From assembly GCF_032062105.1 (NCBI RefSeq), contig NW_026933134.1, positions 248,001 to 312,000 of the forward strand: a stretch of 64,000 bases of DNA, in the 5' to 3' direction. This document shows positions 11,253-29,300 of the stretch, in pieces; positions within the stretch are counted from its first letter, which is position 1, and each line of letters starts with the position of its first letter. A program made the translations under genes and the position numbers. Under the pieces are notes generated by a model. The model did no database searches. It worked only from the letters and a program-made list of their open reading frames with translations, and was not told the origin of the DNA. The DNA is from Saccostrea cucullata. Its lineage: Eukaryota.

Positions 11253-14200
11253 ATGGTGTGTCAAGGGCTAGCATTTCTCCCCTTGATAACAGTCATTGTG
11301 CCTATTGTAGCTTTCATTACAGCTTATGTGTTTGCTGTTCTTCGAAAAGATGTCAATCCTTACTTTCCATATATAAGGTAGTGTTCTTCAACTTAACAGT
11401 ATTGTGAACCTGCAATATTTATCATGTTAATTTATACAGGATGTAAACGTGGGATGTCCTGCTTATTGCAAATTTAAACCTTCTTTATTTCAGTGACACG
11501 GGAACAAGAATCCCTGAAAGTTGTGTATTTGGTCAACTTTTGAATATATCATCCGCTATAGGTAAAATGCAACAAAAAGCATTAATTTTATGTTCGTGTA
11601 TGTTTTTAAGGTGTTTGGCTTCTGACATTAAAAATAATTGAAAATGATTTTCTTCTTTTTTAATTGTAAGAATAAACATAATAAATTATTTTAAGCCAGA
11701 AAAATGCATATGAATATGATTTAATTTTCAAGCTATAGGTGTTCCTGACAAAGGGAGGTAATTCTCTCATTTTAGTAAAGAAAAAGACCAAATTTGTGTC
11801 CAACATATTTAATATTTATTTTAAACTATGAAATGTTTTCAAATCATTCCAACCTTTTGCTATCTTTTAAAAGTAGTCATAGGGAATATAAATATTGATA
11901 AAATAATAATGATAATTGATAGAAGATAAAATTTAATTCTTATCAAAAAGCACACACCCTCATACAAAAAAATGCCTTTTTTCCCTTTCACAGGGCTTAT
12001 AAAATGAGCTTGGAAAATAAATTAGAAATAATTAACAAGTATTTTTTTTTCTATATATTTGTTACTTAGATGAAGTGCTTTCAAATGGTGTAAAAAATTG
12101 TATATCAATATGAGTTACTTTTAAAGATATTTTAACTTGAATTTCCTCTGACCCATTTTTCTCAAATTTTGACCAGAGGAAATTCGGATTGATTCTGTTT
12201 GCCTCTTCCATGATTTTGGGGGATTTTCTATTTGCCTAAATGAATAAGTGTATTGAAACTCAATCTTTTTCTTTAAAAGAAAAGGGACATTTCATTTTTT
12301 GGGGGACTATTTAAGACTTAGGGGAAAGAGGGGAGGGTGGGTGGGGGGGTGGGGGTTAATATCTATTTTCATGCCCACTCACATTACCTGAGGATAATTC
12401 TTTAATAGTTTGACTAATCATGGCTTTGCCTGTTCTGAGTTGAGAGAATTTTACAGACATTTCAAATATTTTTCTATGCATACTTTGCTCCACTTGTGGC
12501 CCATCCTTCCCCCAGGAATTATTGAATATAGGGTATGTAATGAAGCTAAATTTCACGTAAATGTCATCTTTTCTTCAGTGGTTCTTCAGAAGATTTTTGA
12601 ATAATGCCACCAAAATTCTTAATTACCCCCCACTTCAAGAGGGCGAGACACTTCCTATGAACAAAGTTAAATCCCCTTAATTGAAATTGGGCCAGTTGGT
12701 CTTTCAAAGAAATAAAATATATCAAACTTTACACACCCCAGACAAAAGACCGATTGCCAGACAATCTTTGATCAGAAAAGCTCACTCGGGCTTCCGTGTC
12801 AGGTGAGCTAAAAACCACCACATAGTAATCATTTCACTATAAACGTTTCACAGCAAAATTCCAGTTATTGAAAATGAAGGGAATAAAAAAAAAAGACTAA
12901 ATGAATGTTTTGAACTACTAGTTGTACCAATAACAGCTAGTTTAATTTGCGTCATGCAATGTAAATCTCTCTTGATTTCATTGTATCAAACAAAATGTTC
13001 TTTATTCAAGATGAAAAATGATCAACTATTTAACTTTATTCAGATCCATGTTTCCTTGTGATAGAGATCTATCAAATTGTTACCTTTACAAGTAACATAA
13101 AACATTTTTATATACTGCAAACATTAGATTTTTTGTGCCTTTGACAGAAAACTGCTGTTGCTATTTCAAGAACATCGCTAACTTTATGACCTGCGTATTT
13201 ATAAGTACACAATAAAAATTTTGCTAGAAATCAAACCTAGCCCGATTGTTGAAAAATAGATTACTGCCAAGTATAGGTCATACACAATATTAAACATTTA
13301 CAGAATGTCTTTTCATATTCATTTGTGCATGTTTCAATTTAATATGCACATAGTCTTCTTCAATAAATATCAATGAACACCTTTTAATTTTTCATGTATG
13401 CTCAAAATATGGGTAATGAAAATAAATTGTTGTCAATTTCTAAATAAGGATTTATTTTGAATGGAAAGAAAATGTTTTGTTCAACTACAAACTACCTATA
13501 ACAATAAACATTGAAAAAAACAATAGTTCATGGCATAATTATACCCCTGCTCTGAAGCACAGGGTTTATACTGTTTTTCTTTCTACACTTGTGTGTCTTT
13601 CTGTCAGTAACAAATTTTTGTCCAATTTTTCTCAGCAATCACTCATCATGCTCAATTGCTCATCACAGATGCTTTAAGTTTTAGCACACTCTTTCTTTAG
13701 CCATGCCGTATGTTGGAATTGGTTTTAGACGAATCTGATGTCAACTTCCTGATTATCTGTGCATTTGTCTGTACCACAAATAGTAAATTTTTGTCACAGT
13801 TTTCTCCAAAACTACTCATCACATTTGGAATTGGTTTTAGACGAATCTGATGTCAAATTCCTGATTATCTGTGCATCTGTCTGTACCACAAATAGTAAAT
13901 TTTTGTCACAGTTTTCTCCACAACTACTCATCACAGTTGGAATTGGTTTTAGACGAATCTGATGTCAACTTCCTGTTTATCTGTGCATCTGTCTGTACCA
14001 CAAATAATAAATTTTTGTCACAGTTTTCTCCACAACTACTCATCACAGTTGGAATTGGTTTTAGACGAATCTGATGTCAACTTCCTGTTTATCTGTGCAT
14101 CTGTCTGTACCACAAATAACAAATTTTTGTCACAGTTTTCTCCACAACTACTCATCACAGTTGGAATTGGTTTTAGACGAATCTGATGTCAACTTCCTGT

Positions 14201-17200
14201 TTATCTGTGCATCTGTCTGTACCACAAATAATAAATTTTTGTCACAGTTTTCTCCACAACTACTCATCACCGTTGGAATTGGTTTTAGACGAATCTGATG
14301 TCAACTTCCTGTTTATCTGTGCATCTGTCTGTACCACAAATAACAAATTTTTGTCACAGTTTTCTCCACAACTACTCATCACAGTTGGAATTGGTTTTAG
14401 ACGAATCTGATGTCAACTTCCTGTTTATCTGTGCATCTGTCTGTACCACAAATAATAAATTTTTGTCACAGTTTTCTCCACAACTACTCATCACCGTTGG
14501 AATTGGTTTTAGACGAATCTGATGTCAACTTCCTGTTTATCTGTGCATCTGTCTGTACCACAAATAACAAATTTTTGTCACAGTTTTCTCCACAACTACT
14601 CATCACCGTTGGAATTGGTTTTAGACGAATCTGATGTCAACTTCCTGTTTATCTGTGCATCTGTCTGTACCACAAATAATAAATTTTTGTCACAGTTTTC
14701 TCCACAACTACTCATCACAGATGCTTGAAATTTTTTAGACATGAAATATGGTTGGATTCATTTTTGTACGAATCCATTGTCAATTAACTTTGTTTATTCC
14801 TGTCTGTCCATATTCACATCAGAGTGAGGGTATTACTAGTGAGCACTGGCTCACAGAAATCAAACAAACAAACAAACAAACAACCAAACAAACAATAACA
14901 TAGTTACATACAAAGAACATCATACAACTGCGTTACTGCTCAGATCTGAGAAAATCTGCAACAGAATCAATGATTTTTCTAGATTTTGTCACACGCACAC
15001 TGTTATCTGTTATCTCTGTCAGCACATCCTGTACTCCCTCCCTACCATTTCTGCGATAAGCCAGTTGTAAGTGTGATAAGGAGAGTCCACTGCTGGCAAT
15101 CTTATTTCCCATTCCATTCGAAATCACCTTTTGGTCCAATAAAGGCTTTAGTGTGCTCATTAGACTTTTTGTTGTGCTCTTGTGATGGAATATGGCAAAG
15201 GCAGAGTTTGAAGTGAAAGATGCAGCAAGTTTGACTTCAGGGGAAGGTCCTGTATGGTCCAACAATCTCTTCAAGGCTAAGACATCCTGTAATGAGTCAT
15301 GCGCACTGTATTTGTCTTGTAGAATTTCTTCGAAGAGGTGTAACTGTGAGTATGATGAAAGGTTTGGATGCGAAATTTTGAAAAGAGGTAAGGTATCAAT
15401 GAAACCAATGACTGCAGATGAGAATGCCTCCAAAATGTTTAATTTACTCAAAATGTTGAACAGCACAGGAAGGTCAAACACTTTGGAGTTGTGTCCAACT
15501 AGAACAGCATCTGACTCCGATTTCTTCATGAAGTCGATAAACTGGATCAGTGCATCCTTAATGCTGACTGTCTCAACTTCCTCATCATTGTGGTACATTT
15601 TATTGTTGACTACTTTTATTCCAGTAATTTCTGTAGCTTTTGAGGACATTGGTTTTTCTGGAATGATGTATTTGTTGAAAACCTCATCATTTCTAACTGC
15701 AGACAACTGCACAATATGAGAATCCCTTGCTAAAAATAAAAAACAAATAATTTAATTTTGATTGTAACGCATCATTTGATTGGATAAAAAATTAATCTAA
15801 ATTGTATAATCTGGTTTGCTTACGTCACAATGACTTACATCAAATTGTATCAATCCGCTTGACGTTACGTTTAAAATATGAACTATTTGAAGGCGTTATA
15901 AAGAGAAAATTTGTCTTGTTTTATATTCTTGATGATTGAAAATTAAATCATAAGGAGTGAATTAAATGGCAACCCAAATTATACTGCTACAACCTGGGTT
16001 GGAGCAGTTTACGCTTTTTTATAAACCACTTTGAGGTTTAGAAAGCGTAAACTGCCCCAACCCAGGTAATACAGTATAATTTGGGTTGCTATTTAATTCA
16101 TTCCTTAAGTAAATTCAAGTTTTTAAAATTAAAAGCATTAAAAAAAATACATACAAAAATTGATATATTGTAAATGTATTATATTTAGCATGTATGATAT
16201 TTGGCAGAAATTGACTTTTGAATAAGTAAGCGTAGATTTGATTTAGCGCATTTCTTCATTTTCTTCTTTATGTGTATATGTGCAAGACATTTAGCGTTGT
16301 ACTTGATTTAGCGGTTGCTGCGTTTCGCCAAATCCGCTATTAGAATACACAGCCAAATGTAATCCGTTTACAGTATGCATGATTTAAAAAATTTTGAAAC
16401 ATTATAATAATAGTAACCCTCTTCCCCAAGACTTAACTCCTTCAAAGATGCTTGAATTCTTTCAGAATATGCAATTTCTTTTTAATCAGTGTCCTCAGAA
16501 GGAAGGGTAAAGTTTTGAAAGATATAAAACATGCTCAACTACTTGTACCAATACCGGAATTATGCAAGAGTCTCCATTTCTATTCGTTTTCTATGATAAC
16601 TTTAGTATTATTCCTTCAAAATGCATACAAAAGAAATACCGGAAGAGGGCCATAACCATCAGCATTGACTTAACATTTAAATCTAGGTTCTTACCGAGTC
16701 CAGTAGTTTCCAAATCAAAATAGATCTCTTCAGCATTTAACAGCTGACTTGAAGGGAGATGATCATACTTTGGAATTGTTTTTGGAGCTGGAATTTCAAC
16801 GATGTCAGAGGCCTGCTGGAGATCACATCCTGTTAAATAACTGATGCCTTCCCTTGTTTCTTTTGTAGAAATACTTTGAATTCTGTAAAGAAGATGTATA
16901 CTGTAAAACAAATGATTCTAAACTGAGGTCTTACAAAAGGCCTAGCAAAATAAACAATCACCTAATGTACAGCTAATAAATTAGGAGTTGTAAATAAATG
17001 AAAATCCTGAGCACATCGGCAAGGAAAGAGCACAAAGTAGACCAGAATAGAAAAGTTATGGTACATGTAATTTACTGAAGGGGGGGCTTAAATTTTATCA
17101 CTACTTAAGAATGCCTCCATATCAATACAGCATATAACTTTTTTAACATTTTGTTCGTATATATTACTTAGTAATAATTTGAATTTGATTCCCCACTGTT

Positions 17201-17294
17201 TCCCTCCCTACCACAAAGGATCAGGATTTAAACAAATTTAAATCTTCAATACATGAGGATGTTTACATTTCCATATGACTAAACATAGCTTCTC

Positions 17295-17327
<33 letters not shown>

Positions 17328-20300
17328 ATTTTTTCCCTTTATTTTCCTATGTAAAACTTTGATCCACCATGTATGATTTGAAAAAAAAAATTAATTCTAC
17401 TTTACCTGAGGATGCTTCCATATTAATATCACCAATCATAGCTTTGCTATTCTTGAGAATTTTTTAAAAAATATATTGTACTGTAAAATGCAATTGTGGC
17501 CCCACCCTATCCCTGGGGGTCATGATTTAAACAATCTAGAATCTACACTACCTGAGGATGATTTCATTTCAATATCACTTATCATGGCTTTGCAGTCCTT
17601 GAGAAGATTTTTAAAGATTTCAAATTCTCTATATATTCCTGTGTAAAACTTTGATTGGCTATGTGGTCCCACCCTATCCCCCAGGGTCAAGATTTGAACA
17701 AATTTGAATCTACACTACCTGAAGATGATTCCATATGAGTTTCATCTTACCTGGCCCAGTGGATACTAACTTTGTAGCAAGTTTGGTTGAAATTGGCCTA
17801 GTTGTTCTTGAGAGGAAGATGGAAATGTGAAAAGTTAATGACAACAGATACATTTTTATCAGTAAAGCTCACTTGAGCTTTCCGCTAAGGTGAGCTAAAA
17901 AACTGGGTATGTAGGTAGGTAAAATTTTTATTTTAAGATTGCAGCAAAGCAATATGCCCTCCCTTCTTTGAAAAAAATATTTATCAAACCATGCTATTTA
18001 TAACAAGCATACCGTAAATCTTTGGTGATTCAGAAAACAAATCTTAGTAACATGCAAGATATTAATTCCCACTTAAATTCATACTTATCATCATTCACTT
18101 GTTCTTGGTTTATTTTCATTTTTGAGGTTGACAAAAGGTTTTTTACACCTGACAAATGACAATCAAAGTATACTAGTACGTACTTCCTGGCTTTCAATTC
18201 TCTCCTTCTCCTTTTAAATTTCTGTGTCACTGAAATGGCCTTCTGTCGCTTTCTTTGCAAATCCCTCAGAATGCACTGTCGTCGAGTATAGTAGCCAGGA
18301 GAGAGGCCCAATTTCTTGTTAACCTTTAATAAGGATAAAAGAATCTATTATGTACAACTACAATGTACATACATATACAATACAATCTGCTTTTGATTAA
18401 AATTTGCAGAATTTTCAAATGTAAGAGATAACTTGAGTGGTTCAACTCAGATATGACACAATAAGCATGAAAAAATAAAAATTTACAAACCTTTACAAGA
18501 TATCTGTGTCCAACATTTTTCTGGGCTACACATGCAGCAACTCTATATCTGAGGCTTGAAGAAGAGCTGTAATGATGGGTCTTTGGGGCTTTTGCAGACA
18601 CCATTCTGTGAAAACTCTCATTGGACTGTGTGCTTCCTAAGCATGAAAGACGATCAGAATGACTTGCATATGAACTGAAGACTTCTTTCAGATCATCCTG
18701 AAGGAACCTATCTTTCAGGGGTTTTCCATGTGGAAGTGACTTGTACCTCAGGTTAGGGTTGTTAATGAAGTTGCACCACCTTGAGGAGCAGTGTTGGTGA
18801 TCTCCAAATATGTGTAATGGAATTGATGAAAGGTCTTCTTTGATTTGAGAAGCATTTCCTTTTCCCTGTGCTATGGAGTAACTGAAGCATTTCTGAATGT
18901 ACTTTATCACAGACAAAGTTAGAGATGAATGTTTTTTCTTCAAGGTAAACAAAGAGTTTGTAAACAGTTTCTTTAGATGATTTTTATCAGACAACTTCTT
19001 AATATCAGCATTGACATTAGCTTTCAGTCTTGCAATAGTGGTAGAGTCCTCATCTCCAATGATTCCATCAATGGTTATTCCTTTACTTTTCTGTAGATCT
19101 TGGACCATCTCAATAACCATATCTGCCTCCATGGCCTTTGAACTACCCTCCCAATTCTTTGAGCACTCATGGGCTGCTGGATTCTTGTTGGTTGATTCAG
19201 CTACACTGCATACTCTGCAATTCTTAGACCTCAGAGAGTATGACAATACTTTGTCGGAGAGAGGACCAACCATGGAACAATGACCTGAAAAATTACAAAT
19301 TAGAAAAACTGTATAACTTATAGATGTATTCGTTGTTTTTATTAAAGCATTTTTCATGCATTTCTTAACTTAATAAAATGTATGTCTTAATACTTTGGCA
19401 AGGAAAATCAAATTCGATCACTGATGTTACATGTATGCATTTGGTAATAACCTTTAACCCCTTTAGTCAGCAATGAACCTGTGCGTCCAGTGCACTATAG
19501 CATAATTAGGTCAAATATTTATTTTTCATGAGGGGTGCTGTATAATTAATGCAAATCGTTCAACTTTAAAAAAGTAAACAGTTGCTATAAAACGTGTTTG
19601 CAGGATGCAATAGGGACCAAATTCCTACTTCTTTGAAGTTAGTGTTCTAAGTATTGACAATGCTTTGGTAAATAATGTTTCTAATAAGTGTCGTTAAAAA
19701 TTGGTTGCGTGCCATAGAGCGATTAGCGAATACGCTAACTGTGTAAAATCACCTAATATTTTAATATTTTGATTTGACTCATTATGACTCTTAATGATTT
19801 TTCTCGTGTAAACATTATATCCTTTTTTGGCTCCATCATCCCACCTTGGGTCCATATTTCGAACAAAACTGAATATGCTTTACCTGCATGAGCAACATAA
19901 CTATTCATGGCTGTTCTTTAGAAGAATATTTTACAATTTATATGGACAGTTGAACTTTGAGATATGTGTCTTTCTAAATTTATTGCATCTGTTTCGTGGG
20001 CATAAAATTTTGTTGTTTTGACATCAAAAATAATCTCGTCGTTGTTTTAAAACTAACCCTAGGTCTAAAAAAAATATGTTTGTTTCCTGTAACCCGACCG
20101 ACCCATTCAAATTACCCCCCGGGTGAATTTTTTTTCTGACAAATGGCAAAACTTCGTTTGATCAATCAGCTGATTCCATTTATTAAAAAAAGAAAATTAG
20201 CTTGTAGCTTAACTTGAGACATAAAATATGTCAACCTAGTTTACATTTAAGTTTGATTAGTTATAAAGAGTAATCATTATTATAACAACAATTTCCCCCT

Positions 20301-23300
20301 ACAACTTTCTGAAGATCGTTTTCCGCCGCTAGGCAGCCATTTTGGATGCCATGTTGGGTGTCCACTGTAAATATGACACCTGGTATATTGAGTCCAGGGA
20401 TGTTTGACAATGTTTGACAATTCATAAGAAAAAAAAAATCCCGACCTACCGACCCTTAATTTTTTTGGAATGTTACAGGAAACAAACATATTTTTTTTAA
20501 AGCCCTATTCAATATATAGTCATATAAAATTTCGTGTGGGATTTAATTTTGTTGGAATTTTGTTAACGGAATAAACAAAATTTGTGCTTTTACAGTATTT
20601 TTACCTGATAAACTATCATATGTCTTTCCGCTACCCCGTTTTTGCCATCCAGCATCTACAGCAACAACTAGTCCATTTTCGTTCATCTCTCTGAAAAATA
20701 GTTAAATAACAGACATCAGTTATTAACTGTGAACCTGTCTCCTTTAGAACACCCCCTAATGTGCATAACATTCTGCATATTTATCAACACAAATTATACT
20801 GTACATGACTAAACCTTATATTTATCAGTATATCAGATTCTATTAACTTGATCACTATCAATTATTATTAGGTATTCCCTATGATTTTCATTTGGGGATC
20901 AAAACTAAAACACGAGGCTCTTGGGGCTTGGGCCACAATACTCTAGGAAGTCACTGTCTCTGTCCAATCTAATTAAAATTATTTGTTAGATCCACTTGCA
21001 TACTCGCTACACAAACATCTAACAACATCTCATTGAGGGTCACGTCAGAGGTCAAATTCTAATCAACCAATCAAATTGTCTCTTGCAAAATCATTGTTTA
21101 TTTGTTGACGCAATTGAAGAAAATAAGTCTAGGGTTGTTCCGAATTTGAACTCTGAGTGACCCTCTATAGGATGTTGTTAGATGCTAGTGTAGCAATTAT
21201 GCGAGCAGATCTAACATCTAATTTTGATTAGACTGTGTCTCTGTCACTCTTCAATTTTTTTTCTTCAATCAAATTTTCCTTTTTTAATTCATTCTAGGAA
21301 TGAATTTAATAGCTACCCAAGTTATACTGTATATCCTGGGTTGTGCCAGTTTTGGCTTTCTATACAGCGAGGCTTTCATTTCAAAGCAGGTTACACTATT
21401 ATAACTTGGATAACTATGAAGTTAATTCCTTATAATTTAATTCTCCATCAATAAGTAAAGAAAATAAGACAATTTTTCCTTCAAAGATGCATGCAATTAG
21501 TACATACATGTATCTTATATGTAAAATTAAATGGGTTGTTATGTTTGTGACATACATGTTAGTAATTGTGACTTAACCAACACAGGTTATACCATATGAC
21601 CACTACACATGTATGCTAGACACCCATTGATCTGATCAGAAAAGCTCTATTGCGCCTTTGGCTCATTTGAGCTAAATAGTGAGATTTAAACTGAATTTAT
21701 ATTGTTTACACACTCATTCATCATTTCCAGTTCCTTCTGCAAAGCATCAGACATAGACTCTGCAGCAATATCTTCAACAGCTCTGCCTATCTCTTTCTGT
21801 CTTTTGTCCAGCATGGCATGGCTTACAGGTGGTATATTCAGCTCAGAAAGGAGACTGTTGACTTGTGTTGCACCAATACCAACATGTACAATTGCTGTAA
21901 ATACAAATTCATAAATGTAAAAAAGAAATCAATCTAATCACTTTAAACAAGAAGCTTGTGAAATACAACACTCATCTTAGTCTCCTTTATTTTCTCTCTT
22001 TATTACCAGAAATTAAAAATAGAACCCATACTTTTAACAAACTAAACCCCTAGGGGTAATGGCAACAAAACTTGAAATGATCTACATTAGGATGATTCAA
22101 TATCAATATGATTAATACAGTAATAAGGCTTTGCTGTTCTACAGAGAATTTTTTCCATCTGAATAGTCAAATGGTTTAGAGAACAAATCAAAAAAAGTCC
22201 CATTCTAACTTGTTATACCCTTTCTATGATGTGAATATAGGTTCTTTTGTGAATATACAGGCAGACACATGGATAAATAGGAAGCAGACATTGGATTTCT
22301 ATAAAAGTGAATTCCATCATATGGCATATTGCCAAAACAAGGTGTGACTGTGTGGTAAAACACAAGAGTAAAACAGTATACCAGTACCCACTTCCCTCTC
22401 CTTTAAAGCATATTTTGAAAAGTTGACAGACAGATAAATGGAAAAAGATCAGAAAGCTGAAATGAGCCTCTGGCTTCAATAAGTTAAAAATAGCTTGCCT
22501 TCTCATCAAGTTTTTATTCTGAATTAAACATTATCAGGGGCGGATCCAGGAATTGAAGTTAGACGGGCAGGGTTCGACATTAACGTTAGTCCGTTAGTCT
22601 CAGACTAATAAGTCTCAGACTAATACATTTTCATTTGGACTAATAAAAGTTGTGGCGTATTAGTCCGAATGGACTAATAAAGTTTTCTGGGGGAAAAAAT
22701 TACCGAAGTTCTCGACAACTTTCACTGGAAAACCCGTATGTATTTTTAGCTTTCTTGCATCTTGGCGGAAAGTTATGTAATTCTGAGTCAATTCGGCACT
22801 TAATTTTAGGACTCATTGGAATGAAATTAAACATTTTAGGGATTATGATTTATCATGACTCATAAAGAAAGATGTCGGGCATTTGGATGTCGTAATCATT
22901 TATAGAGAATAATGAGATTGGGAACACGATCCTAGTTCCTGATCAGGCAATTTCAACAAATATTGGTATAAAACATTTCATGTAAACGCATGCTTTGTTT
23001 ATTACAAAAAAAGTATAAAAAGTACCTTGAAATGTAAATTCTATTGTTTAATTATATTTTTGACGGACTCATAAAATTGCCTGTGGACTAATAAAATTAA
23101 AGATACACTAGTCCGGCTAGACCAACGCCGAAAAATGTTAGTGTCGAACCCTGGCGGGTTGGGCGCCAGATTCAGGCAGGGGGTCTGGGGGCCGCCTTGA
23201 GGCAAAGCCCTGGTGGGGGCCAAGGGGGCGAAGCCCCCCGAAGCTCTTGGAGTCTAGAGGTTTTGTAGGGTAAAAATGAGGTCTACCAAGTAGACATCAG

Positions 23301-26300
23301 AAACATTTCCTCGACAAAACTATGTTTTATGCTAACTTTGACAATTTCAGGGGGGGTGCGCGCCGGGTGTGCCCCCCCTTAAATCCGCCACTGATTATAT
23401 CAATTTATAGATACATATACCTATTTACTGGCTATGAGGACAAAAGCAAGTTTATTGTCCCCCAAGACAGCAACAATTTCTCAAGGTGCGTCCAAGTTGC
23501 TGTTGAGGGGGACAACAAACTTGCTTATATTGGAATAGACAGGTAAAACTCAATCAGGCTCTTGTGACTTGACAATAATAAATATACATGTAACTGATGT
23601 AGGGGATGTGTACGTTAAACTTCTTACCTGCTGATAGCTTTGTATTTACATCCCACACTCTTCCATGTTTTTTCCCCGATTTTACATGGTTAATATGATT
23701 ACACTTTGTATTGCTGCAACAGACCTGAAATGTTAATGTAAAATCAATGAATCCCTAATTACAGGTCACTGTTCTAAATTCATTCACCATTAATGAAATC
23801 AAATGCTTGGGAAAAAAGAATTTAAATATGCATTACTTCAAATTACTTCAAAGAAAAAAATGTAACATCTTTCAAAACTAAAAATATGGATATATGGAAT
23901 ACTGCCTGTTTTATATGGAGAAAAATTCAAGGAAAAACCTTTCAAGGTTGTTTTTATACAAACTGTGCAAAAATTGGTGAGTTCATACCTTTAACAAAGA
24001 AGCTAAACCATATGTCAACACAGAAATAGTGTGTGAAAGTTGCAATGGTAAGCCACATTTACAACATCCCCGCAAGCCCTCAGCTAACACTCCAAGTTCT
24101 ACTACTCTCCTCCCCTCCTTCCAATCCTCAGATGTAGTCACTTCTTCCCCATCCACCACCTCCTCTCTTTCCAGTATATTCAAATTTGGCAATTCTATGA
24201 ATAATGAATAAAAATTATCACCATTACACATTCTTTATTATCTACTGTAACACATCCTGACTAGTTGACTGTTTAGATACACTTACTAAATTCCAAGAAC
24301 CAGTTTTCAAAATAATTCATAGTGCCGATATACAACATATTTTTCCATATACCGATATTTCTCAAGATATTCTGAAATCAATCTAAAATATGATCTACTT
24401 TCTTTTACTCGACATTTGCTTGGGCCCCTGGTCATTCACATGTAAACAGACGGTGTATGAGGTGCAGCGAAGAGTTGCATAGCATTTGCAAGATCTTTCA
24501 ACATTTTAAAGTTGATTTCTTACTCCAGATTGTAAGGTTAAGTAGTCTGTATTAATAAGTTAAAATCTGCATCAACAACTACACCGCCATTTTGATTATG
24601 AATGTAAAAGAAGCTATATGGTTGAACAATTTTTTCCCGTAATGCATTATCATGATTATATACATTTCTATTTTCAAAACAATTAGACCGCTAACATTTT
24701 GTTTGTGACTTAGTAAGATCATATGATCCAATTAAAGAAAAATCATGTAAATCTCAAATTCAAATGAGCAAATATTCATTGAGTTTAGAATAGACTTTGG
24801 AGAAAATTTGTCCTGTCGTTCCCGTGTAACAATTAGTGTTGGGCCCATTGGCAAGCTGATGTCAATTAAAAAAATTTAGGTCAATTTCGGAATTGATTTC
24901 ATAATATCTTAAGAAGTATAAGGAATTACGGAATGAAATTTGAAGGAATGAAGATTGTTTATATATGGATAGATATGGGTAAAAAGTAAATTTGTAAAGC
25001 ATTCAATTTAAAAGAATTTTATTGGTGAAAGTAGGTACCCTATGAAAAGAGTTCCATACCTTTATTTTTTTTTTAACACCTCAATTTTTTTTCTAAGTGA
25101 TCTAAAGGCCTGTGGGTCAAATGAGTATATCTTTCATCACGTGCAGTGTATTAAAATAAAATACAGTAATTATCTTTGATTAGTATTGTCATGTAAGGTA
25201 AGACATCTGATTCAGCAAATGTAATTTTTTTTTTGTAACAGCTAGGCCTAGTATATATATATTTTATTGAAATCCACATATAACATCATGTATAGTTAAA
25301 TTTATTATTATCAAGTATGATTCAAATTTCCATGTTGCACTTTGATTACAATAGGCCATGTGGTTTTCAATAAAATACCCCCCCCCCCCCAAAAAAAATT
25401 ATATTTTTAAAACTTTGTTGTCAATCAGCATGATCAGATGAAAACTTGTTTTTATCAAAATATATCTTTGAAAATTCAATTATATACTTGATAAAAACAA
25501 GTTTTCAATGTCTTAGTTATGTCATGTTGTTTTTCAATGAAATATTGAGAAAAATTCAATATCTTCTCTTTTGGTGCACATCTTTAACTATTATAATTTT
25601 TTTTTAAATAGCTACACGTAGTCATAGTTCAAAAAGTCTTTAGATTAGACCTGGTATATAAAATGAACATCAACAAATTCATGTACCTCCCTTTAATATT
25701 TCTAATATTTTTAATAGACCTATGTGTAATCATGGTAATTTAGATGCAGATATGAAAACGAGTCTTTTAGATTACGTATTTTACATGTACAAACCGTGAT
25801 CGTGATCAACGCTGACAGGGGTTGCACTGGCGGAGTAATTGTGGTCTGTAAGGATAGCTCCCCTAATCCATCGAGTCAATTGCCCTGCAGATACTTTATC
25901 ATATCTCTCCTTCTGCTTTTTCGAGACGAACCCATGGCGTCTGTACTTTGGTTTCACCATCTCAACCAAAGTTACCGCGCAGACCTTGACTTCTCGTCTG
26001 CTTTTTGTTTACATTATCGTAATCCGGTTCACATCCGCGAAATGTAAAATGCTTATTATATGTTTGTTTTCTGGCATAAAAAATCGTTATTATGTTACTT
26101 TCTATGGATGATGATTATAATTATTTGTAGAAACTATTAATTCTCTGCCGTATTGAATTCTTTATTATAACGACATTCAGACCAATTTCCGGCAGTTCGA
26201 GTTGCGCGGTGAATTCAATTTCGTCAGAAGCGAAACACCTTAAATTATTTTGAACTTGAAACAGTGTATTCTTGAATGTTTTTAAATGTATTTTTAAGAA

Positions 26301-29300
26301 AATAATTTGTTGCAGTATTTAATCAATTGATTGTTGAAAATTTTTAATGAAAAAGTAAACGCATGGACAGTCTTCTCCAAATCTCTTTTTCAGTACATGC
26401 CCTTTGGGCACCTGTAACTAATTTCACTAGCCCGTACAAATAGAAATGCCTAGAATTTTACCAAGATTTTTTTTTTTTTTTTGCCTTTTTATGCCAAGGA
26501 AATGATCCGAAATCCATTTCTATCAATCTATTGTCTTGCCCTTAACATTTTTTTCAATCTGTACATTTTTTGTGGCTCCTTGCAAAAGTTCCTTTTGAAT
26601 TGAGGTAGAATAAACTGTCGCTAAAATTTTCTTTTGCCCTTCTTTTAAAATGAAAAATCAGATACTTTAAAGTATATTTAATGTTATTAGTATTCTTAAA
26701 CTTGATTCTGCCACAGAATTTACATGCTCTTTGGGCTTGTAAGTGTGCAATTTTCACATGCCCACTTTCAACTTTACCAGTTCAAGGCTTTGGACTCCCA
26801 GGATTTGGTCAAGTCTGCATGGATTAAATAAATGTTTTAATGGTAATCATGCTAATAGATATCATAACTTTCATGAACAGAATGTCAATATTTTGATTTA
26901 CACATTCCATGATTTTTTTTTTCTTTAGCCATCTGCACTATATATGTACGGTACAAGCTTGTTCAAAGCATGGTTCAACTTGGAGATGCCTCCATTATGA
27001 GCTACAATAAACACACCATTGTATGGGGATCATTGGCTGTTCTAGGACTAAGTTTGGTAGCAAATTTCCAGGTACGGATTAATTTTAATTTTGAATTATT
27101 TTTGATAAATATTGGACTTTTTCCCACCTACCATTTTTCTTGGCTTCAGTGTTAAAAAAAAAAAGATAAAGGGGCTGAGGGGCCATCACATTGTAAACTC
27201 AAAAACTTAATATGTTTATTTTCCATATACTGATTTTATTAATTCTGAATCCACTAATAAAGATACAGATTTCTTGACTTTGTTTTACAATTTGCATAAA
27301 AAAATATACTTTCAGAAATTTAGGAAAACAATGTGTTTAACTTAAGATATAATTTTTGTATTATTTCAGGAAACCTCAGTGGAGGTTGTTCATGTTATAG
27401 GAGCGACATTTGTGTTAGGTTTTGGAGTGGTTTATGAGTTTCTCCAAACATCAATATCATATAAAATGTATCCAGTCTGCAACGGTCTACGTATCTGTAG
27501 AATTCGCCTTGTGATTAGCATAATATCACTCATCGGTTTCATAATGAGTAAGACATTTTTATTTTCTATAATTCAAATTTTATTTATAACGAAATGCAAG
27601 CTTCCTTATGGGGTTTTAATATGATTCAAATCATGTCACAAGGAATCAAGAACATTTTAAAAGTATCTAAAAGAAGTCGGTTCACTTTATGCATAAAATG
27701 GCCCTGTAGATACACCAATTAATTGATCAACACTTGATTTTCTATTTGAAGCATTAAAATAAAATAGACACTTGGTGCTTTCATATCCTATTAAAAATAT
27801 TCCCCTAAAAGTCCAAGTCTTGGAGAACTGGCTTTTTGAAATTGCAATATTCTTGAATTTTTAGGTAAACAGGTATAATTGAGTACTTTCAGTGAAGAAA
27901 AATTATATGAGCGCACTCTCTGATCTAAAAAATGAAACTTGTGACGTCATAATGCATTGACTAGCCAGAAAATGACGTCATTTTTGATAGATACGCAGTC
28001 ACCAAAGATCTAAGTGATATTTAATGCATTGTTAACTAAAACTTTGCAGTTTCAGTTTTTCAGAAATTCACAGGGCCAAATAAGGCAAAAGTGAACCTTG
28101 TTCTTTGCACATGCTTACATTTATAAATTTCTACAGTTCATAGTCCATTCTATCTTGACCTCACTATTGTTATTTTTATGAAGTATACAGGAACTAATAT
28201 CTTTAACTTTACAATGTATATAGGGAGTTTCTATTTTAAACATATATGTTTAAACATTTATGTGGAATGCACATAACTCTCAACATGGCCCATTGTGAGG
28301 GGGAAATTTTTTTTGACTGTGTCCTAACAACTCCATGGTTCGGATCTTGGTCCACATGAATATCATAATCTATATCTTTGAGTCAACATTGTTACATTTT
28401 TGTAAAGGGTATAGGCAAACCTAATACCGCAGACAGTCAGAGAGGCAAACAAAATATTAAAGGAACCCATATTTTTTTTTTGTTCTCAGATACAATGAAA
28501 CCTCATTATCTTGAGCTTAAAAAACTTACAGATATCCAAGGATTCAAGATATCCAGTGTAAAATGTTTTTTAAAAGAATAATGGGTTGGGACTTCCAAAT
28601 CACTTTGACATAGCCATGGTATTCAAGATATCAGTGTTTAAGATATCAAAGTTCAACTGCATATCTTGTATTTTTCCATATATCAGGGGCCTGAGTCTAC
28701 TTCGGCCCTAGACAGACTTCATTTACATTCATTCTGGGAAATTACTTGTTTTTTTTTTTTACCTTACCTAATGACCAATCACATCACTATAGGTGGGCTC
28801 AGTTTCTACTTATAAAATCCTGTGTTTGTTTGTCATCCCCTTGCAATGGAGATGGAGGGGATACAGTAACCCAGATCTGTATAAGTTTGTGAGTGGGTGA
28901 GTTACATGTAGTGCTGAACGAAACAGAAGTGAGGTAATTTGCATTGGTATCAATGATTTCTACTCTTTGTGACAGGATGCTCCGCTTTGCACTACCCTTT
29001 TTGTTGGTATGTTTGTTTTATGCCGGTTGATGGCAGCAAATTTATAACTATTTACAGCCTAAGAGGTATTTTCTATGCAGATCCAACTGTAACACAGGAC
29101 CTCTGTTTATATGGTCTCATCCGAAGGGTGGATTTCCATGTCCCACAAAAGGAGTCAAATCCGTGGCATAAGGATCATGACCTTGCTCTGCAATTGTTTA
29201 ACAAATGCGCTAAACACTGCGTTAAAAGACTCCTATAAGATATATGACTCCCTTAAAAATGACCTGGAGTGAAAGGTCAGGTGAAGACCTTTGATGTTTG

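What the first reader, a model, noticed from the sequence alone, without database searches (positions are those of the whole stretch)
14933..16882. Transposon-borne exonuclease resembles the PML/Plex9/exuperantia-like DEDDh clade
Seen: after the DEDDh core comes ISNGMGNKIASSGLSLSHLQLAYRRNGREGVQDVL...RVTKSRKII, which I recognise as the helical module that follows the exonuclease in PML-like proteins. Established: vertebrate PML isoform I carries a C-terminal DEDDh-like domain, and fish PML-like exonucleases have been reported to act TREX1-like against retroelements. Inference: elements like this could be the mobile reservoir from which PML-type exonucleases were domesticated. Alternatively the transposon may use the nuclease against competing retroelements, or to remove immunostimulatory DNA by-products.
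Basis: partly seen in the sequence, partly recalled or inferred. Interest (0 to 1): 0.75.

Follow-up and report, generated by a model that had tools for sequence, protein, structure and literature searches.

The report
Oyster transposon with PML-like exonuclease
A recently active oyster jumping gene of an already described type (KolobokD) makes a transposase fused to a DNA-trimming exonuclease whose nearest known relatives are the fish Plex9/PML-type nucleases, which hints, without proving, that vertebrates took this module from such transposons.

Summary
Window 14933-16882 (minus strand) is the last two exons of one spliced gene. They encode a DEDDh 3'-5' exonuclease followed by a helical domain that matches Pfam PML_C (E 7.7e-25).

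The gene lies in a 14,630-bp element (11610-26239). It has 17-bp inverted ends, GG..CC termini and TTAA duplications in 11 of 11 copies checked. That makes it a Kolobok element, not a Mutator element as the Pfam name suggests. RNA-run contigs join the transposase exons to the exonuclease exons through GT..AG introns, in one frame.

This architecture was published in 2022 as the KolobokD lineage (PMC9587614), so the element is a new member of a known kind.

The closest solved relative is fish Plex9.1 (VIA Z 24.1), ahead of Exuperantia, TREX1 and ERI1. No paper I could search links KolobokD to PML or Plex9, although RefSeq already names mussel copies 'protein PML-like'.

In my trees the fish Plex9 clade sits inside the transposon nucleases. 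The alternative is not rejected (p-AU 0.23), so domestication remains a hypothesis.

The scan found this family before, on other copies in the same genome.

The parts
11606..11609 (.). Left target-site duplication, TTAA
   Evidence: TTAA is on both sides in 11 of 11 copies checked, with unrelated flanks.
11610..26239 (-). Whole KolobokD-type DNA transposon, 14,630 bp; the gene is on the minus strand
   Evidence: Inverted repeat I13. In the genome the left 300 bp has 38 matches and the right 300 bp has 36. Termini are GG..CC.
11610..11626 (+). Left terminal inverted repeat, GGTGTTTGGCTTCTGAC
   Evidence: 16 of 17 bases are complementary to the right end.
26223..26239 (+). Right terminal inverted repeat, GTCAGAAGCGAAACACC
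26240..26243 (.). Right target-site duplication, TTAA
25790..25960 (-). Exon 1, with the start codon (MVKPKYRR...); the 3' boundary is approximate
   Evidence: tblastn of database protein P0001 (RefSeq model of a Saccostrea cucullata protein), 98% identity.
24061..24195 (-). Exon 2 region (transposase N-terminal part); boundaries approximate
   Evidence: tblastn of P0001. The open frame runs 23983-24231.
21704..21895 (-). Exon 3 region; boundaries approximate
   Evidence: tblastn of P0001.
20605..20689 (-). Exon 4, carrying the first catalytic-type D (VDAGW, 20645-20659)
   Evidence: tblastn. The 3' boundary comes from the RNA-contig joint 19282>20603, cut +2. Motif located.
18491..19284 (-). 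Exon 5, the transposase core: C-x2-C-x13-H-x-C finger 19163-19219, GDED 19046-19057, DHQH (DxxH) 18791-18802, QSNES 18614-18628
   Evidence: Pfam PF20700 at E 5.8e-53. Joints, frame, motifs.
18184..18323 (-). Exon 6, a basic linker (..RKRQKA..KFKRRRRELKAR)
   Evidence: Joints 18320>18488 (cut +3) and 16882>18184. Open frame shown.
16695..16882 (-). Exon 7, linker plus the ExoI motif FDLETTG (16699-16719)
   Evidence: Joints. An exon-7 contig is present in RNA run X3. Motif located.
15730..16694 (-). Intron 7 (965 nt, GTAAG..TTTTAG), splitting the exonuclease just after ExoI
   Evidence: Joint 15729>16695 in the X1 contig. Splice-site letters.
14933..15729 (-). Exon 8, the rest of the DEDDh exonuclease (ExoII 15473-15493, ExoIII 15284-15301), the PML_C domain and the stop codon
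   Evidence: AlphaFold2 pLDDT 97.3.
14942..15157 (-). PML_C (SAM-like) helical domain, including the RVTK hairpin at 14984-14995
   Evidence: Pfam PF25244 at E 7.7e-25. Folded alone, pLDDT is 93.6 and the best matches are SAM domains at Z 6.4-5.0, including Exu SAM-like at Z 5.4.
13712..14720 (.). Tandem repeat of 112 bp, 9 copies, inside the element downstream of the stop codon

Best explanation
This is one copy of a young, multi-copy KolobokD DNA transposon in an oyster-type bivalve genome.

Shown:
- Its single eight-exon gene is spliced into one reading frame.
- That frame encodes a Kolobok DDE transposase, a basic linker, a DEDDh 3'-5' exonuclease with all catalytic motifs, and a SAM-like PML_C domain.
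- The EXO-SAM module is therefore part of the transposase polypeptide.

Inferred mechanism: the exonuclease acts in cis at the transposition complex. It would trim 3' ends of DNA intermediates, such as non-transferred strands, flaps or TTAA-gap ends, during cut-and-paste excision and integration. The SAM-like domain would help hold nucleic acid or subunits.

The same EXO fold, with or without the tail, occurs in host genes as fish Plex9 and, by the Pfam family, in the PML C-terminus.
For: Element:
- TTAA duplications and GG..CC ends are present in 11 of 11 copies examined: the window plus 10 of about 25 full-length candidates.
- The left end has 38 matches and the right end 36.
- 25 exon-8 copies are 96-100% identical, and 23 of the 25 have no stop.

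Fusion:
- A 1,927-nt contig in run X1 joins 20603+ | 19282-18488 | 18320-18184 | 16882-16695 | 15729-14984. All four skipped parts are CT..AC on the plus strand, that is GT..AG on the minus strand.
- RNA run X3 shows two of these joints and an exon-7 contig.
- Exon phases agree.
- A RefSeq model of a related oyster, P0001, has the same fusion.

The linkage is old:
- 12 of 14 diverged EXO loci in this genome have the transposase upstream on the same strand.
- 26 of 33 database relatives of 430 aa or more carry it.
- Atlas clusters with PF20700, RNase_T and PML_C occur in Mollusca and Cnidaria. One fusion protein is from krill.

Catalysis is conserved:
- Across 102 sequences H79 is invariant.
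- N80, D85, H143 and D148 are at 90% or more.

Published view: Kojima and Bao propose that the KolobokD nuclease degrades DNA intermediates from the 3' end (PMC9587614, passage seen).
Against: - No biochemistry exists for any Kolobok transposase or for this nuclease. The step 'acts on transposition intermediates' is inference.
- The closest characterised relatives (Plex9, TREX1) are not transposition factors. They degrade cytosolic DNA and restrict retroelements (PMC10123124, abstract).
- Expression is low in oligo-dT raw reads, with depth about 1-3 on exons.
- Run X1 is RNA only by guess.
- Intact frames in near-identical young copies say nothing about selection.
Confidence: 0.6

Rival explanations
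1. TREX1/Plex9-like clean-up or competition role. The fused nuclease does not serve the transposition chemistry. It would degrade excised or extrachromosomal transposon DNA, or cDNA of competing retroelements. That would lower innate DNA sensing or rival load.
For: Nearest solved relatives are Plex9.1 (Foldseek E 3.2e-11, TM 0.83 by target, rmsd 1.3; VIA Z 24.1) and then TREX1/2. Plex9 and gar PML suppress L1 and can complement TREX1 loss (PMC10123124, abstract seen).
Against: The nuclease is covalently fused to the transposase and a basic linker in one frame. This linkage persists across families of 30-48% identity and across phyla. A free cytosolic scavenger would not need that. No data on localisation.
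Confidence: 0.2
2. Nucleic-acid-binding adaptor like Exuperantia or the human PML PXL domain. The EXO-SAM module would mainly bind structured RNA or DNA, for example to localise or regulate the element's own transcript. Hydrolysis would be secondary.
For: The EXO plus SAM-like arrangement is shared with Exu (VIA Z 20.2, 248 residues aligned over model residues 1-264; Foldseek 292 columns). The tail alone matches SAM domains. PXL and Exu bind UG-rich RNA (PMC13659232, passages).
Against: Exu and human PXL lack the catalytic residues (PMC13659232). Here all DEDDh motifs are present and are kept in 90% or more of 102 relatives. The Pfam SAM_Exu match is only E 0.13.
Confidence: 0.07
3. Passenger. 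A host exonuclease gene was captured by, or lies next to, a transposon and does nothing for it.
For: DNA transposons do capture host fragments (general knowledge). 7 of 33 long database relatives show no transposase part.
Against: The module lies inside the inverted repeats and moves with the element in every copy. It is spliced in frame to the transposase. The same fusion is found in diverged families and in other phyla.
Confidence: 0.03

Closest known systems
KolobokD lineage of Kolobok DNA transposons (Kojima and Bao 2022, Mob DNA, PMC9587614)
   Same: TTAA duplication, RR..YY termini and a DDE transposase with DxxH. It has a CCHC finger after the first D and a DEDDh nuclease downstream of the transposase. 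The host range includes molluscs. The paper notes similarity to Exu, TREX and ERI1.
   Different: This is a new family of about 14.4 kb, with eight exons and large introns holding nested repeats. The main text of the paper does not mention the SAM-like PML_C tail, Plex9 or PML (0 occurrences). I could not compare with its consensus sequences because supplements are closed.
Teleost Plex9 (also named 'protein PML-like', 'three prime repair exonuclease 4' or 'exodeoxyribonuclease III'); PDB 9MRC/9MRD, and by sequence 9L85 and 9L8B
   Same: The EXO domain is the nearest solved relative: phmmer 2.1e-34 to 1.5e-22, profile 9e-70 to 4e-60, Z 24.1 at rmsd 1.2 over 169 residues. It has the same DEDDh motifs and 34-37% identity. 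That is the same range as between KolobokD families (33-42%).
   Different: Plex9 proteins are small host proteins of about 240 aa. They have no transposase and no PML_C domain (0 of 120 listed).
PML isoform 1 C-terminal PXL domain (EXO-like plus SAM-like; PMC13659232)
   Same: Two-domain EXO plus helical-bundle layout. A long connector helix runs into a five-helix bundle (model helices 173-192, 194-198, 204-212, 217-236 and 250-263). The tail matches the Pfam family named after PML.
   Different: Human PXL has lost the catalytic residues and, per the paper, the beta-hairpin insertion. Here both are present. No direct sequence or structure comparison with PML was possible with these libraries.
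Drosophila Exuperantia (PDB 5L80)
   Same: EXO-like plus SAM-like arrangement; second-best structural match (Z 20.2).
   Different: Exu is a pseudonuclease and an RNA-localisation factor. Sequence similarity is weak (phmmer E 4.8e-3; SAM_Exu E 0.13).
TREX1/TREX2
   Same: DEDDh fold (Z about 17); 3'-5' DNA exonucleases.
   Different: Much weaker sequence match (3.7e-4 to 0.7 with the single sequence). No SAM-like tail.

Membership tests
Kolobok superfamily | 4-bp TTAA target-site duplication | tested here: met
   11 of 11 copies have TTAA on both sides with unrelated flanks. Definition taken from PMC9587614.
Kolobok superfamily | Termini 5'-RR ... YY-3' with terminal inverted repeats | tested here: met
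   GG...CC in 11 of 11 copies. The 17-bp inverted repeat is 16/17 complementary.
Kolobok superfamily | [quoted passage not shown] | tested here: met
   VDAGW, GDED, DHQH and QSNES occur in that order on exons 4-5. Pfam PF20700 at E 5.8e-53. Which residues are catalytic is read from the paper's description, not assayed.
KolobokD lineage | DEDDh (DnaQ-type) exonuclease encoded with the transposase | tested here: met
   It is spliced in frame downstream of the transposase. DEDDh motifs located.
KolobokD lineage | Second (CCHC) zinc finger downstream of the first catalytic D | tested here: met
   CRVCSVAESTNKNPAAHEC at 19163-19219. Feature described in PMC9587614.
KolobokD lineage | Transposase groups with Repbase KolobokD families in a tree | not testable with these tools
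   Repbase and the paper's supplementary alignments were not available.
Mutator/MuDR superfamily (the name of Pfam PF20700) | Target-site duplication of about 8-10 bp (recalled, not from a call) | tested here: not met
   The duplication is TTAA, 4 bp, in 11 of 11 copies.
DEDDh 3'-5' exonucleases | ExoI D-x-E, ExoII D and ExoIII H-x4-D motifs on an RNase H-like fold | tested here: met
   FDLETTG, HNSKVFD and HDSLQD. They align with E. coli DnaQ, RNase T and ExoX motifs. VIA Z is 15.0 to DnaQ. Enzyme activity was not tested.
Plex9 / PML-CDE clade | Closer to Plex9 than to TREX, ERI1, Exu or DnaQ in sequence and structure | tested here: met
   (values given under Closest known systems).
Plex9 / PML-CDE clade | Detectable similarity of the EXO part to PML itself | tested here: inconclusive
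   No PML chain is among the 60 listed of 73 profile matches. None appears in Foldseek or VIA, whose libraries may predate the PXL entry. The only link is the Pfam PML_C tail.
Plex9 / PML-CDE clade | Single host gene at the pml locus, not mobile | tested here: not met
   It lies inside a TIR-bounded element with about 25-38 copies. It is a homologue, not an orthologue.
Exuperantia | Pseudonuclease (catalytic residues lost) with the SAM_Exu domain | tested here: not met
   Catalytic motifs are intact. SAM_Exu scores E 0.13, 13 bits against a cut-off of 28.9.

The most novel reading that the evidence does not exclude
The C-terminal EXO-SAM module of vertebrate PML (exon 9, PXL) and the teleost Plex9 nucleases descend from the accessory nuclease of a KolobokD-type transposon. 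It would have been captured at or before the origin of jawed vertebrates. This would parallel the Kolobok KolX to P2X7 C-terminus capture proposed in PMC9587614. A famous antiviral and genome-stability factor would then carry a domesticated transposon nuclease. The 'ancient EXO-SAM module' that PMC13659232 asks about would have a mobile, catalytically active reservoir of thousands of copies in invertebrates.
Probability: 0.4. Interest if true: 0.75.

Novelty: new member of a known kind. Interest (0 to 1): 0.5.

Why it matters
As an element it is ordinary: a new family of the published KolobokD lineage.

Its value lies in the link it makes testable. Two PML papers describe the PML, Plex9 and Exu EXO(-SAM) module without any mention of transposons. 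The later one explicitly calls for evolutionary analysis of EXO-SAM proteins. The one transposon paper does not mention PML, Plex9 or the SAM-like tail.

Here the two meet. A catalytically intact EXO-SAM module is fused to a transposase. It is abundant, with 2,267 clusters at 50% identity at E 1e-3 or better. It is as close to fish Plex9 as KolobokD families are to one another.

If direction can be shown, this would explain where PML exon 9 came from. It would also add a second case of a Kolobok accessory protein becoming the C-terminus of a vertebrate gene.

Tried and rejected
Mutator (MULE) classification, suggested by the Pfam name: rejected because the duplication is TTAA and the ends are RR..YY.

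Host gene next to a transposon: rejected.

Getting PML proper into the comparison failed in several ways:
- The search for homologous proteins with the EXO-PML_C region of the 820-aa fusion P0064 found only itself, 1 of 1,420 candidates.
- The PDB profile search listed no PML chain.
- The tail alone found only a chance flavodoxin hit at E 0.57.
- The Foldseek and VIA libraries show no PXL entry.

So no tree contains PML.

Outgroups:
- The genome search with PF00929 named control genomes but gave no handles.
- I therefore took E. coli K-12 DnaQ, RNase T and ExoX from NC_000913.3.
- Their branches are very long (about 3-4 changes per column), so the root is unsure.

Nestedness of Plex9:
- It appears in the careful tree and in a second, quick tree with a second fish paralogue type. 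The careful search of that second set did not finish and I stopped it.

- Not testable here. The Plex9 paper has 0 occurrences of intron or exons.
- One weak hint exists. Both EXO copies in the Scleropages gene model P0249 start a few residues after the position of the exon 7/8 junction and lack ExoI.

Host context:
- I saw a Frag1/DRAM-type exon at 27346-27621 (E 1.2e-5, below the cut-off).
- I did not verify that the element sits in a DRAM intron.

Rows left out of counts and trees:
- For the trees I chose 24 of the 34 transposase-linked representatives, 18 short ones, 5 long ones without a transposase part, and 13 (later 14 plus 2) fish rows.
- P0001 was left out because its database model skips part of the nuclease.
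- P0007 and P0037 (repeat arrays) were left out.

Supplements of PMC9587614 (KolobokD consensus sequences and alignments) and of PMC10123124 (tree data sets) were closed. They may bear on family assignment and on whether invertebrate sequences were ever included.
Full report
OBSERVATION

The window is AT-rich eukaryotic DNA (GC about 0.27-0.39) from a 1.17-Gb assembly.

- Pfam scores it as PML_C (PF25244) at E 7.7e-25, over residues 186-257 and profile positions 3-74 of 75.
- It also scores RNase_T at 4e-10 and Exu_RNase_H_like at 5.8e-8.
- The ExoI motif FDLETTG sits on a separate upstream piece, ORF 16591-16911.

THE ELEMENT

An inverted repeat joins 11605-11626 with 26223-26244. Read at base level, the element is 11610-26239, or 14,630 bp.
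- Its ends are GGTGTTTGGCTTCTGAC and GTCAGAAGCGAAACACC, 16 of 17 complementary.
- TTAA flanks both sides.
- The first 300 bp has 38 matches in the genome and the last 300 bp has 36. Paired ends lie 12.7-21 kb apart.
- I fetched both junctions of 10 of the roughly 25 full-length candidates. Counting the window, 11 of 11 have GG..CC ends and TTAA on both sides, in unrelated flanks.
- Exon 8 has 25 copies at 96-100% protein identity, and 23 of the 25 have no stop.

So this is a young, mobile family.

A TTAA duplication with RR..YY ends defines Kolobok (PMC9587614, passage seen). It excludes the Mutator assignment that the Pfam name PF20700 suggests.

THE GENE

Database protein P0001 is a 728-aa RefSeq model from Saccostrea cucullata, 98% identical. 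It maps by tblastn to eight pieces from 25960 down to 14936.

Read laying on 14800-20750 gave these results:
- Run X1 (RNA by guess) holds a 1,927-nt contig laid as 14984-15729, 16695-16882, 18184-18320 and 18488-19282, then on to 20603.
- The four skipped parts are 965, 1,301, 167 and 1,320 nt. All are CT..AC on the plus strand, which is GT..AG on the gene's strand.
- Run X3 (RNA on record) shows the joints 18320>18488 and 19282>20603, and a contig that covers exon 7.
- One raw oligo-dT read of X22 shows 18320>18488.
- Raw-read depth on exons is low, about 1-3.

The splice letters and per-exon frames fit one continuous frame through exons 5 to 8.

All searches and folds were done exon by exon or with stored database proteins.

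Exons 4-5 carry, in order: VDAGW, a C-x2-C-x13-H-x-C finger, GDED, DHQH and QSNES. This matches the Kolobok signature and the second CCHC finger that the paper ascribes to KolobokD and a few other lineages. Pfam PF20700 scores E 5.8e-53.

The protein is therefore transposase, basic linker, DEDDh exonuclease and PML_C.

ALREADY KNOWN

Kojima and Bao (2022, PMC9587614; passages seen) named KolobokD.
- They describe Kolobok families in molluscs, arthropods and cnidarians that encode a DEDDh nuclease.
- They found it similar to exuperantia, TREX and ERI1.
- They proposed that it degrades DNA intermediates from the 3' end.

The element is thus a new member of a known kind.

Their main text has 0 occurrences of PML, Plex9, SAM or sterile. 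It is the only paper in the library with the word KolobokD.

WHAT THE NUCLEASE RESEMBLES

phmmer of exon 8 against PDB sequences:
- 9L8B 2.1e-34, 9L85 2.1e-26, 9MRD 2.9e-23, 9MRC 1.5e-22.
- TREX2 3.7e-4, TREX1 3.6e-3, Exu 4.8e-3.
- 9MRC is zebrafish Plex9.1 according to PMC13659232 and the PDB title.

A profile of 102 relatives gives 9.3e-70 to 4.3e-60 for the same four chains. It gives Exu 1.7e-18, PolC exonuclease 6.1e-17, TREX2 9e-13 and TREX1 1.9e-11. No PML chain is among the 60 listed of 73 matches.

AlphaFold2 of exon 8 (264 aa, 102-row alignment) has pLDDT 97.3 and pTM 0.88.
- Foldseek: Plex9.1 at E 3.2e-11, TM 0.83 by target, rmsd 1.3 over 169 columns; Exu EXO plus SAM at E 1.1e-7 over 292 columns; TREX2 and TREX1 at 1e-5 to 1e-4.
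- VIA-align over 48,161 chains: Plex9.1 Z 24.1 (rmsd 1.2, 169 aligned); Exu Z 20.2 (248 aligned over residues 1-264, rmsd 11.3, so a different domain orientation); TREX1 17.2; DinG 15.4; ERI1 3'hExo 15.2; DnaQ 15.0.

The tail folded alone (pLDDT 93.6) matches SAM domains.
- Tankyrase SAM scores Z 6.4 and Exu SAM-like Z 5.4, with the highest identity among the top rows, 18%.
- These Z values are modest. They support no more than a SAM-like bundle.

The model's long helix 173-192 followed by four helices fits the connector plus five-helix bundle described for PXL (PMC13659232, section 19 read in full). The hairpin at residues 37-51 fits the insertion which that paper says Plex9.1 and Exu have and PXL lacks.

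Catalytic residues are kept. In the 102-row alignment H79 is invariant, and N80, D85, H143 and D148 are at 90% or more.

HOW WIDE AND HOW LINKED

The exhaustive representative search found 2,267 clusters at E 1e-3 or better, 1,144 at 1e-10 and 201 at 1e-30.
- Of the best 150, 34 carry a Kolobok transposase part. So do 26 of the 33 that are 430 aa or longer.
- Of 10 long proteins scanned with Pfam, 5 have PF20700 plus PML_C and 8 have PML_C.
- In this genome 147 of 475 candidates were scored, down to 30% identity.
- Of 14 diverged loci fetched with their upstream side, 12 have the transposase on the same strand. L033 and L051 gave no hit.

Named sources are Mytilus species, Mizuhopecten, Saccostrea, the krill Meganyctiphanes and the hemichordate Saccoglossus. 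Atlas clusters with PF20700, RNase_T and PML_C are commonest in Mollusca and Cnidaria.

RefSeq already names mussel proteins 'protein PML-like', and UniRef has 'PML C-terminal domain-containing protein'. The resemblance therefore sits in databases, though not in the papers I could search.

FISH SIDE

A profile of three pipefish hits found 427 proteins at E 1e-5 or better among 8,000 scored candidates.
- The 120 listed are teleost proteins of about 240 aa.
- They are named 'protein PML-like', 'three prime repair exonuclease 4' or 'exodeoxyribonuclease III'.
- None of the 120 has PF25244 or PF20700.
- P0165 matches 9MRD at 1.7e-45, so these are the Plex9 family.
- Some gene models merge two tandem paralogue types. 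By eye, the middle copy in P0256 is nearly the sequence aligned for 9L8B.

Over the EXO columns the window is 34-37% identical to fish rows. It is 33-42% identical to other KolobokD families and 47-51% to its nearest family.

DIRECTION

I built a tree of 66 rows and 182 columns, rooted with E. coli DnaQ, RNase T and ExoX.
- The careful tree has teleost Plex9 as one clade (100/99).
- That clade lies inside a polytomy of transposon-type nucleases, with the Saccoglossus protein as sister (81/79).
- Two transposase-linked oyster and scallop rows branch earlier (92/68 and 92/91).
- A second set with the other fish paralogue type gave the same picture in a quick tree, with the fish clade at 99.

Three limits apply. 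The outgroup branches are very long. The tree with all transposon-type rows held together is only 11.3 log-likelihood units worse (p-AU 0.231). PML itself is absent.

Breadth and depth of the transposon lineage across three or more phyla, set against a gnathostome-only PML (PMC10123124, passage), favour transfer from transposon to host. So does the KolX to P2X7 precedent proposed in PMC9587614. Even so, this remains an inference.

LITERATURE CHECK FOR NOVELTY OF THE LINK

- PMC10123124 has 0 occurrences of transposase, DNA transposon, Mutator, invertebrate or domesticat.
- PMC13659232 has 0 of transposase, transposon, Mutator, invertebrate or domesticat. It says that among structural homologues only Exu shares the EXO/SAM arrangement, and it calls for evolutionary analysis of EXO-SAM proteins.
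- The words PML and Kolobok co-occur in one review, seen as a listing only.
- No listed paper combining transposase, exonuclease and domesticated holds 'PML-like'.
- Supplements were closed.

MECHANISM

Shown:
- The module is part of the transposase polypeptide.
- It is conserved with its catalytic residues.
- It moves with an active element.

Inferred: it trims 3' ends of transposition intermediates in cis.

Rivals are a TREX1-like clean-up or anti-retroelement role, an Exu/PXL-like binding role, and a passenger.

EARLIER NOTES OF THE SCAN

Notes on this window gave the element bounds and the Kolobok reading (s1-725289), which I tested and confirm, and nested insertions in introns (s1-725412). 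Three follow-up reports on other copies in the same genome reached the same KolobokD and Plex9/PML reading. One adds a shared intron with fish genes, which I could not test.

VERDICT

The element type is already described. The PML/Plex9 kinship is real at the level of Plex9 and of the PML_C family. Domestication is plausible but unproven.

Noticed in passing
window 13712-14720: A 112-bp tandem repeat of 9.0 copies at 97% match lies inside the element, between the stop codon and the left end. It also reads as overlapping short ORFs on both strands.
   Followed up: partly
window 17387-17983, also 16193-16391 and 20372-20570: Stretches inside introns 6, 7 and 4 have very high depth in all four runs, with raw reads up to about 70 and contig word depth up to 258,000. 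Raw RNA reads show a back-joint 17762>17602 with 9 letters between (186 reads in X21, 165 in X22). These look like nested, highly repeated or transcribed short elements, possibly in tandem elsewhere. Unexplained.
   Followed up: no
window 3012-5429 (minus strand): An uninterrupted 806-aa open frame with Sulfate_transp (E 1.7e-98) and STAS (2.7e-15), i.e. an SLC26-type transporter without introns.
   Followed up: partly
window 27346-27621 (+) and 37823-38230 (+): A Frag1/DRAM/Sfk1-type exon (E 1.2e-5, below the Pfam cut-off) just right of the element, and a homeodomain exon (E 4e-17) further on. Whether the element lies in a DRAM intron was not verified.
   Followed up: partly
database proteins P0007 (1333 aa) and P0037 (871 aa): Close relatives of the nuclease (E 9e-59 and 9e-43) made of three or four tandem Exu-like domains. 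P0007's repeats lack the ExoI D-x-E motif. Neither has a transposase part or a PML_C domain. Possibly arrays of dead nucleases; source organism not named.
   Followed up: no
G000:C20521:21048-23000 (L046) and about 10 like it: A diverged family (33-34% identity) in which the transposase core and the nuclease lie in one 690-aa open frame without the introns seen here.
   Followed up: partly
database proteins P0256, P0176, P0249, P0172 (teleosts): Fish gene models merge two or three tandem Plex9-type copies of two paralogue types. In P0249 both copies begin just after the position of this element's exon 7/8 junction and lack ExoI. This hints at an intron at a similar place.
   Followed up: partly
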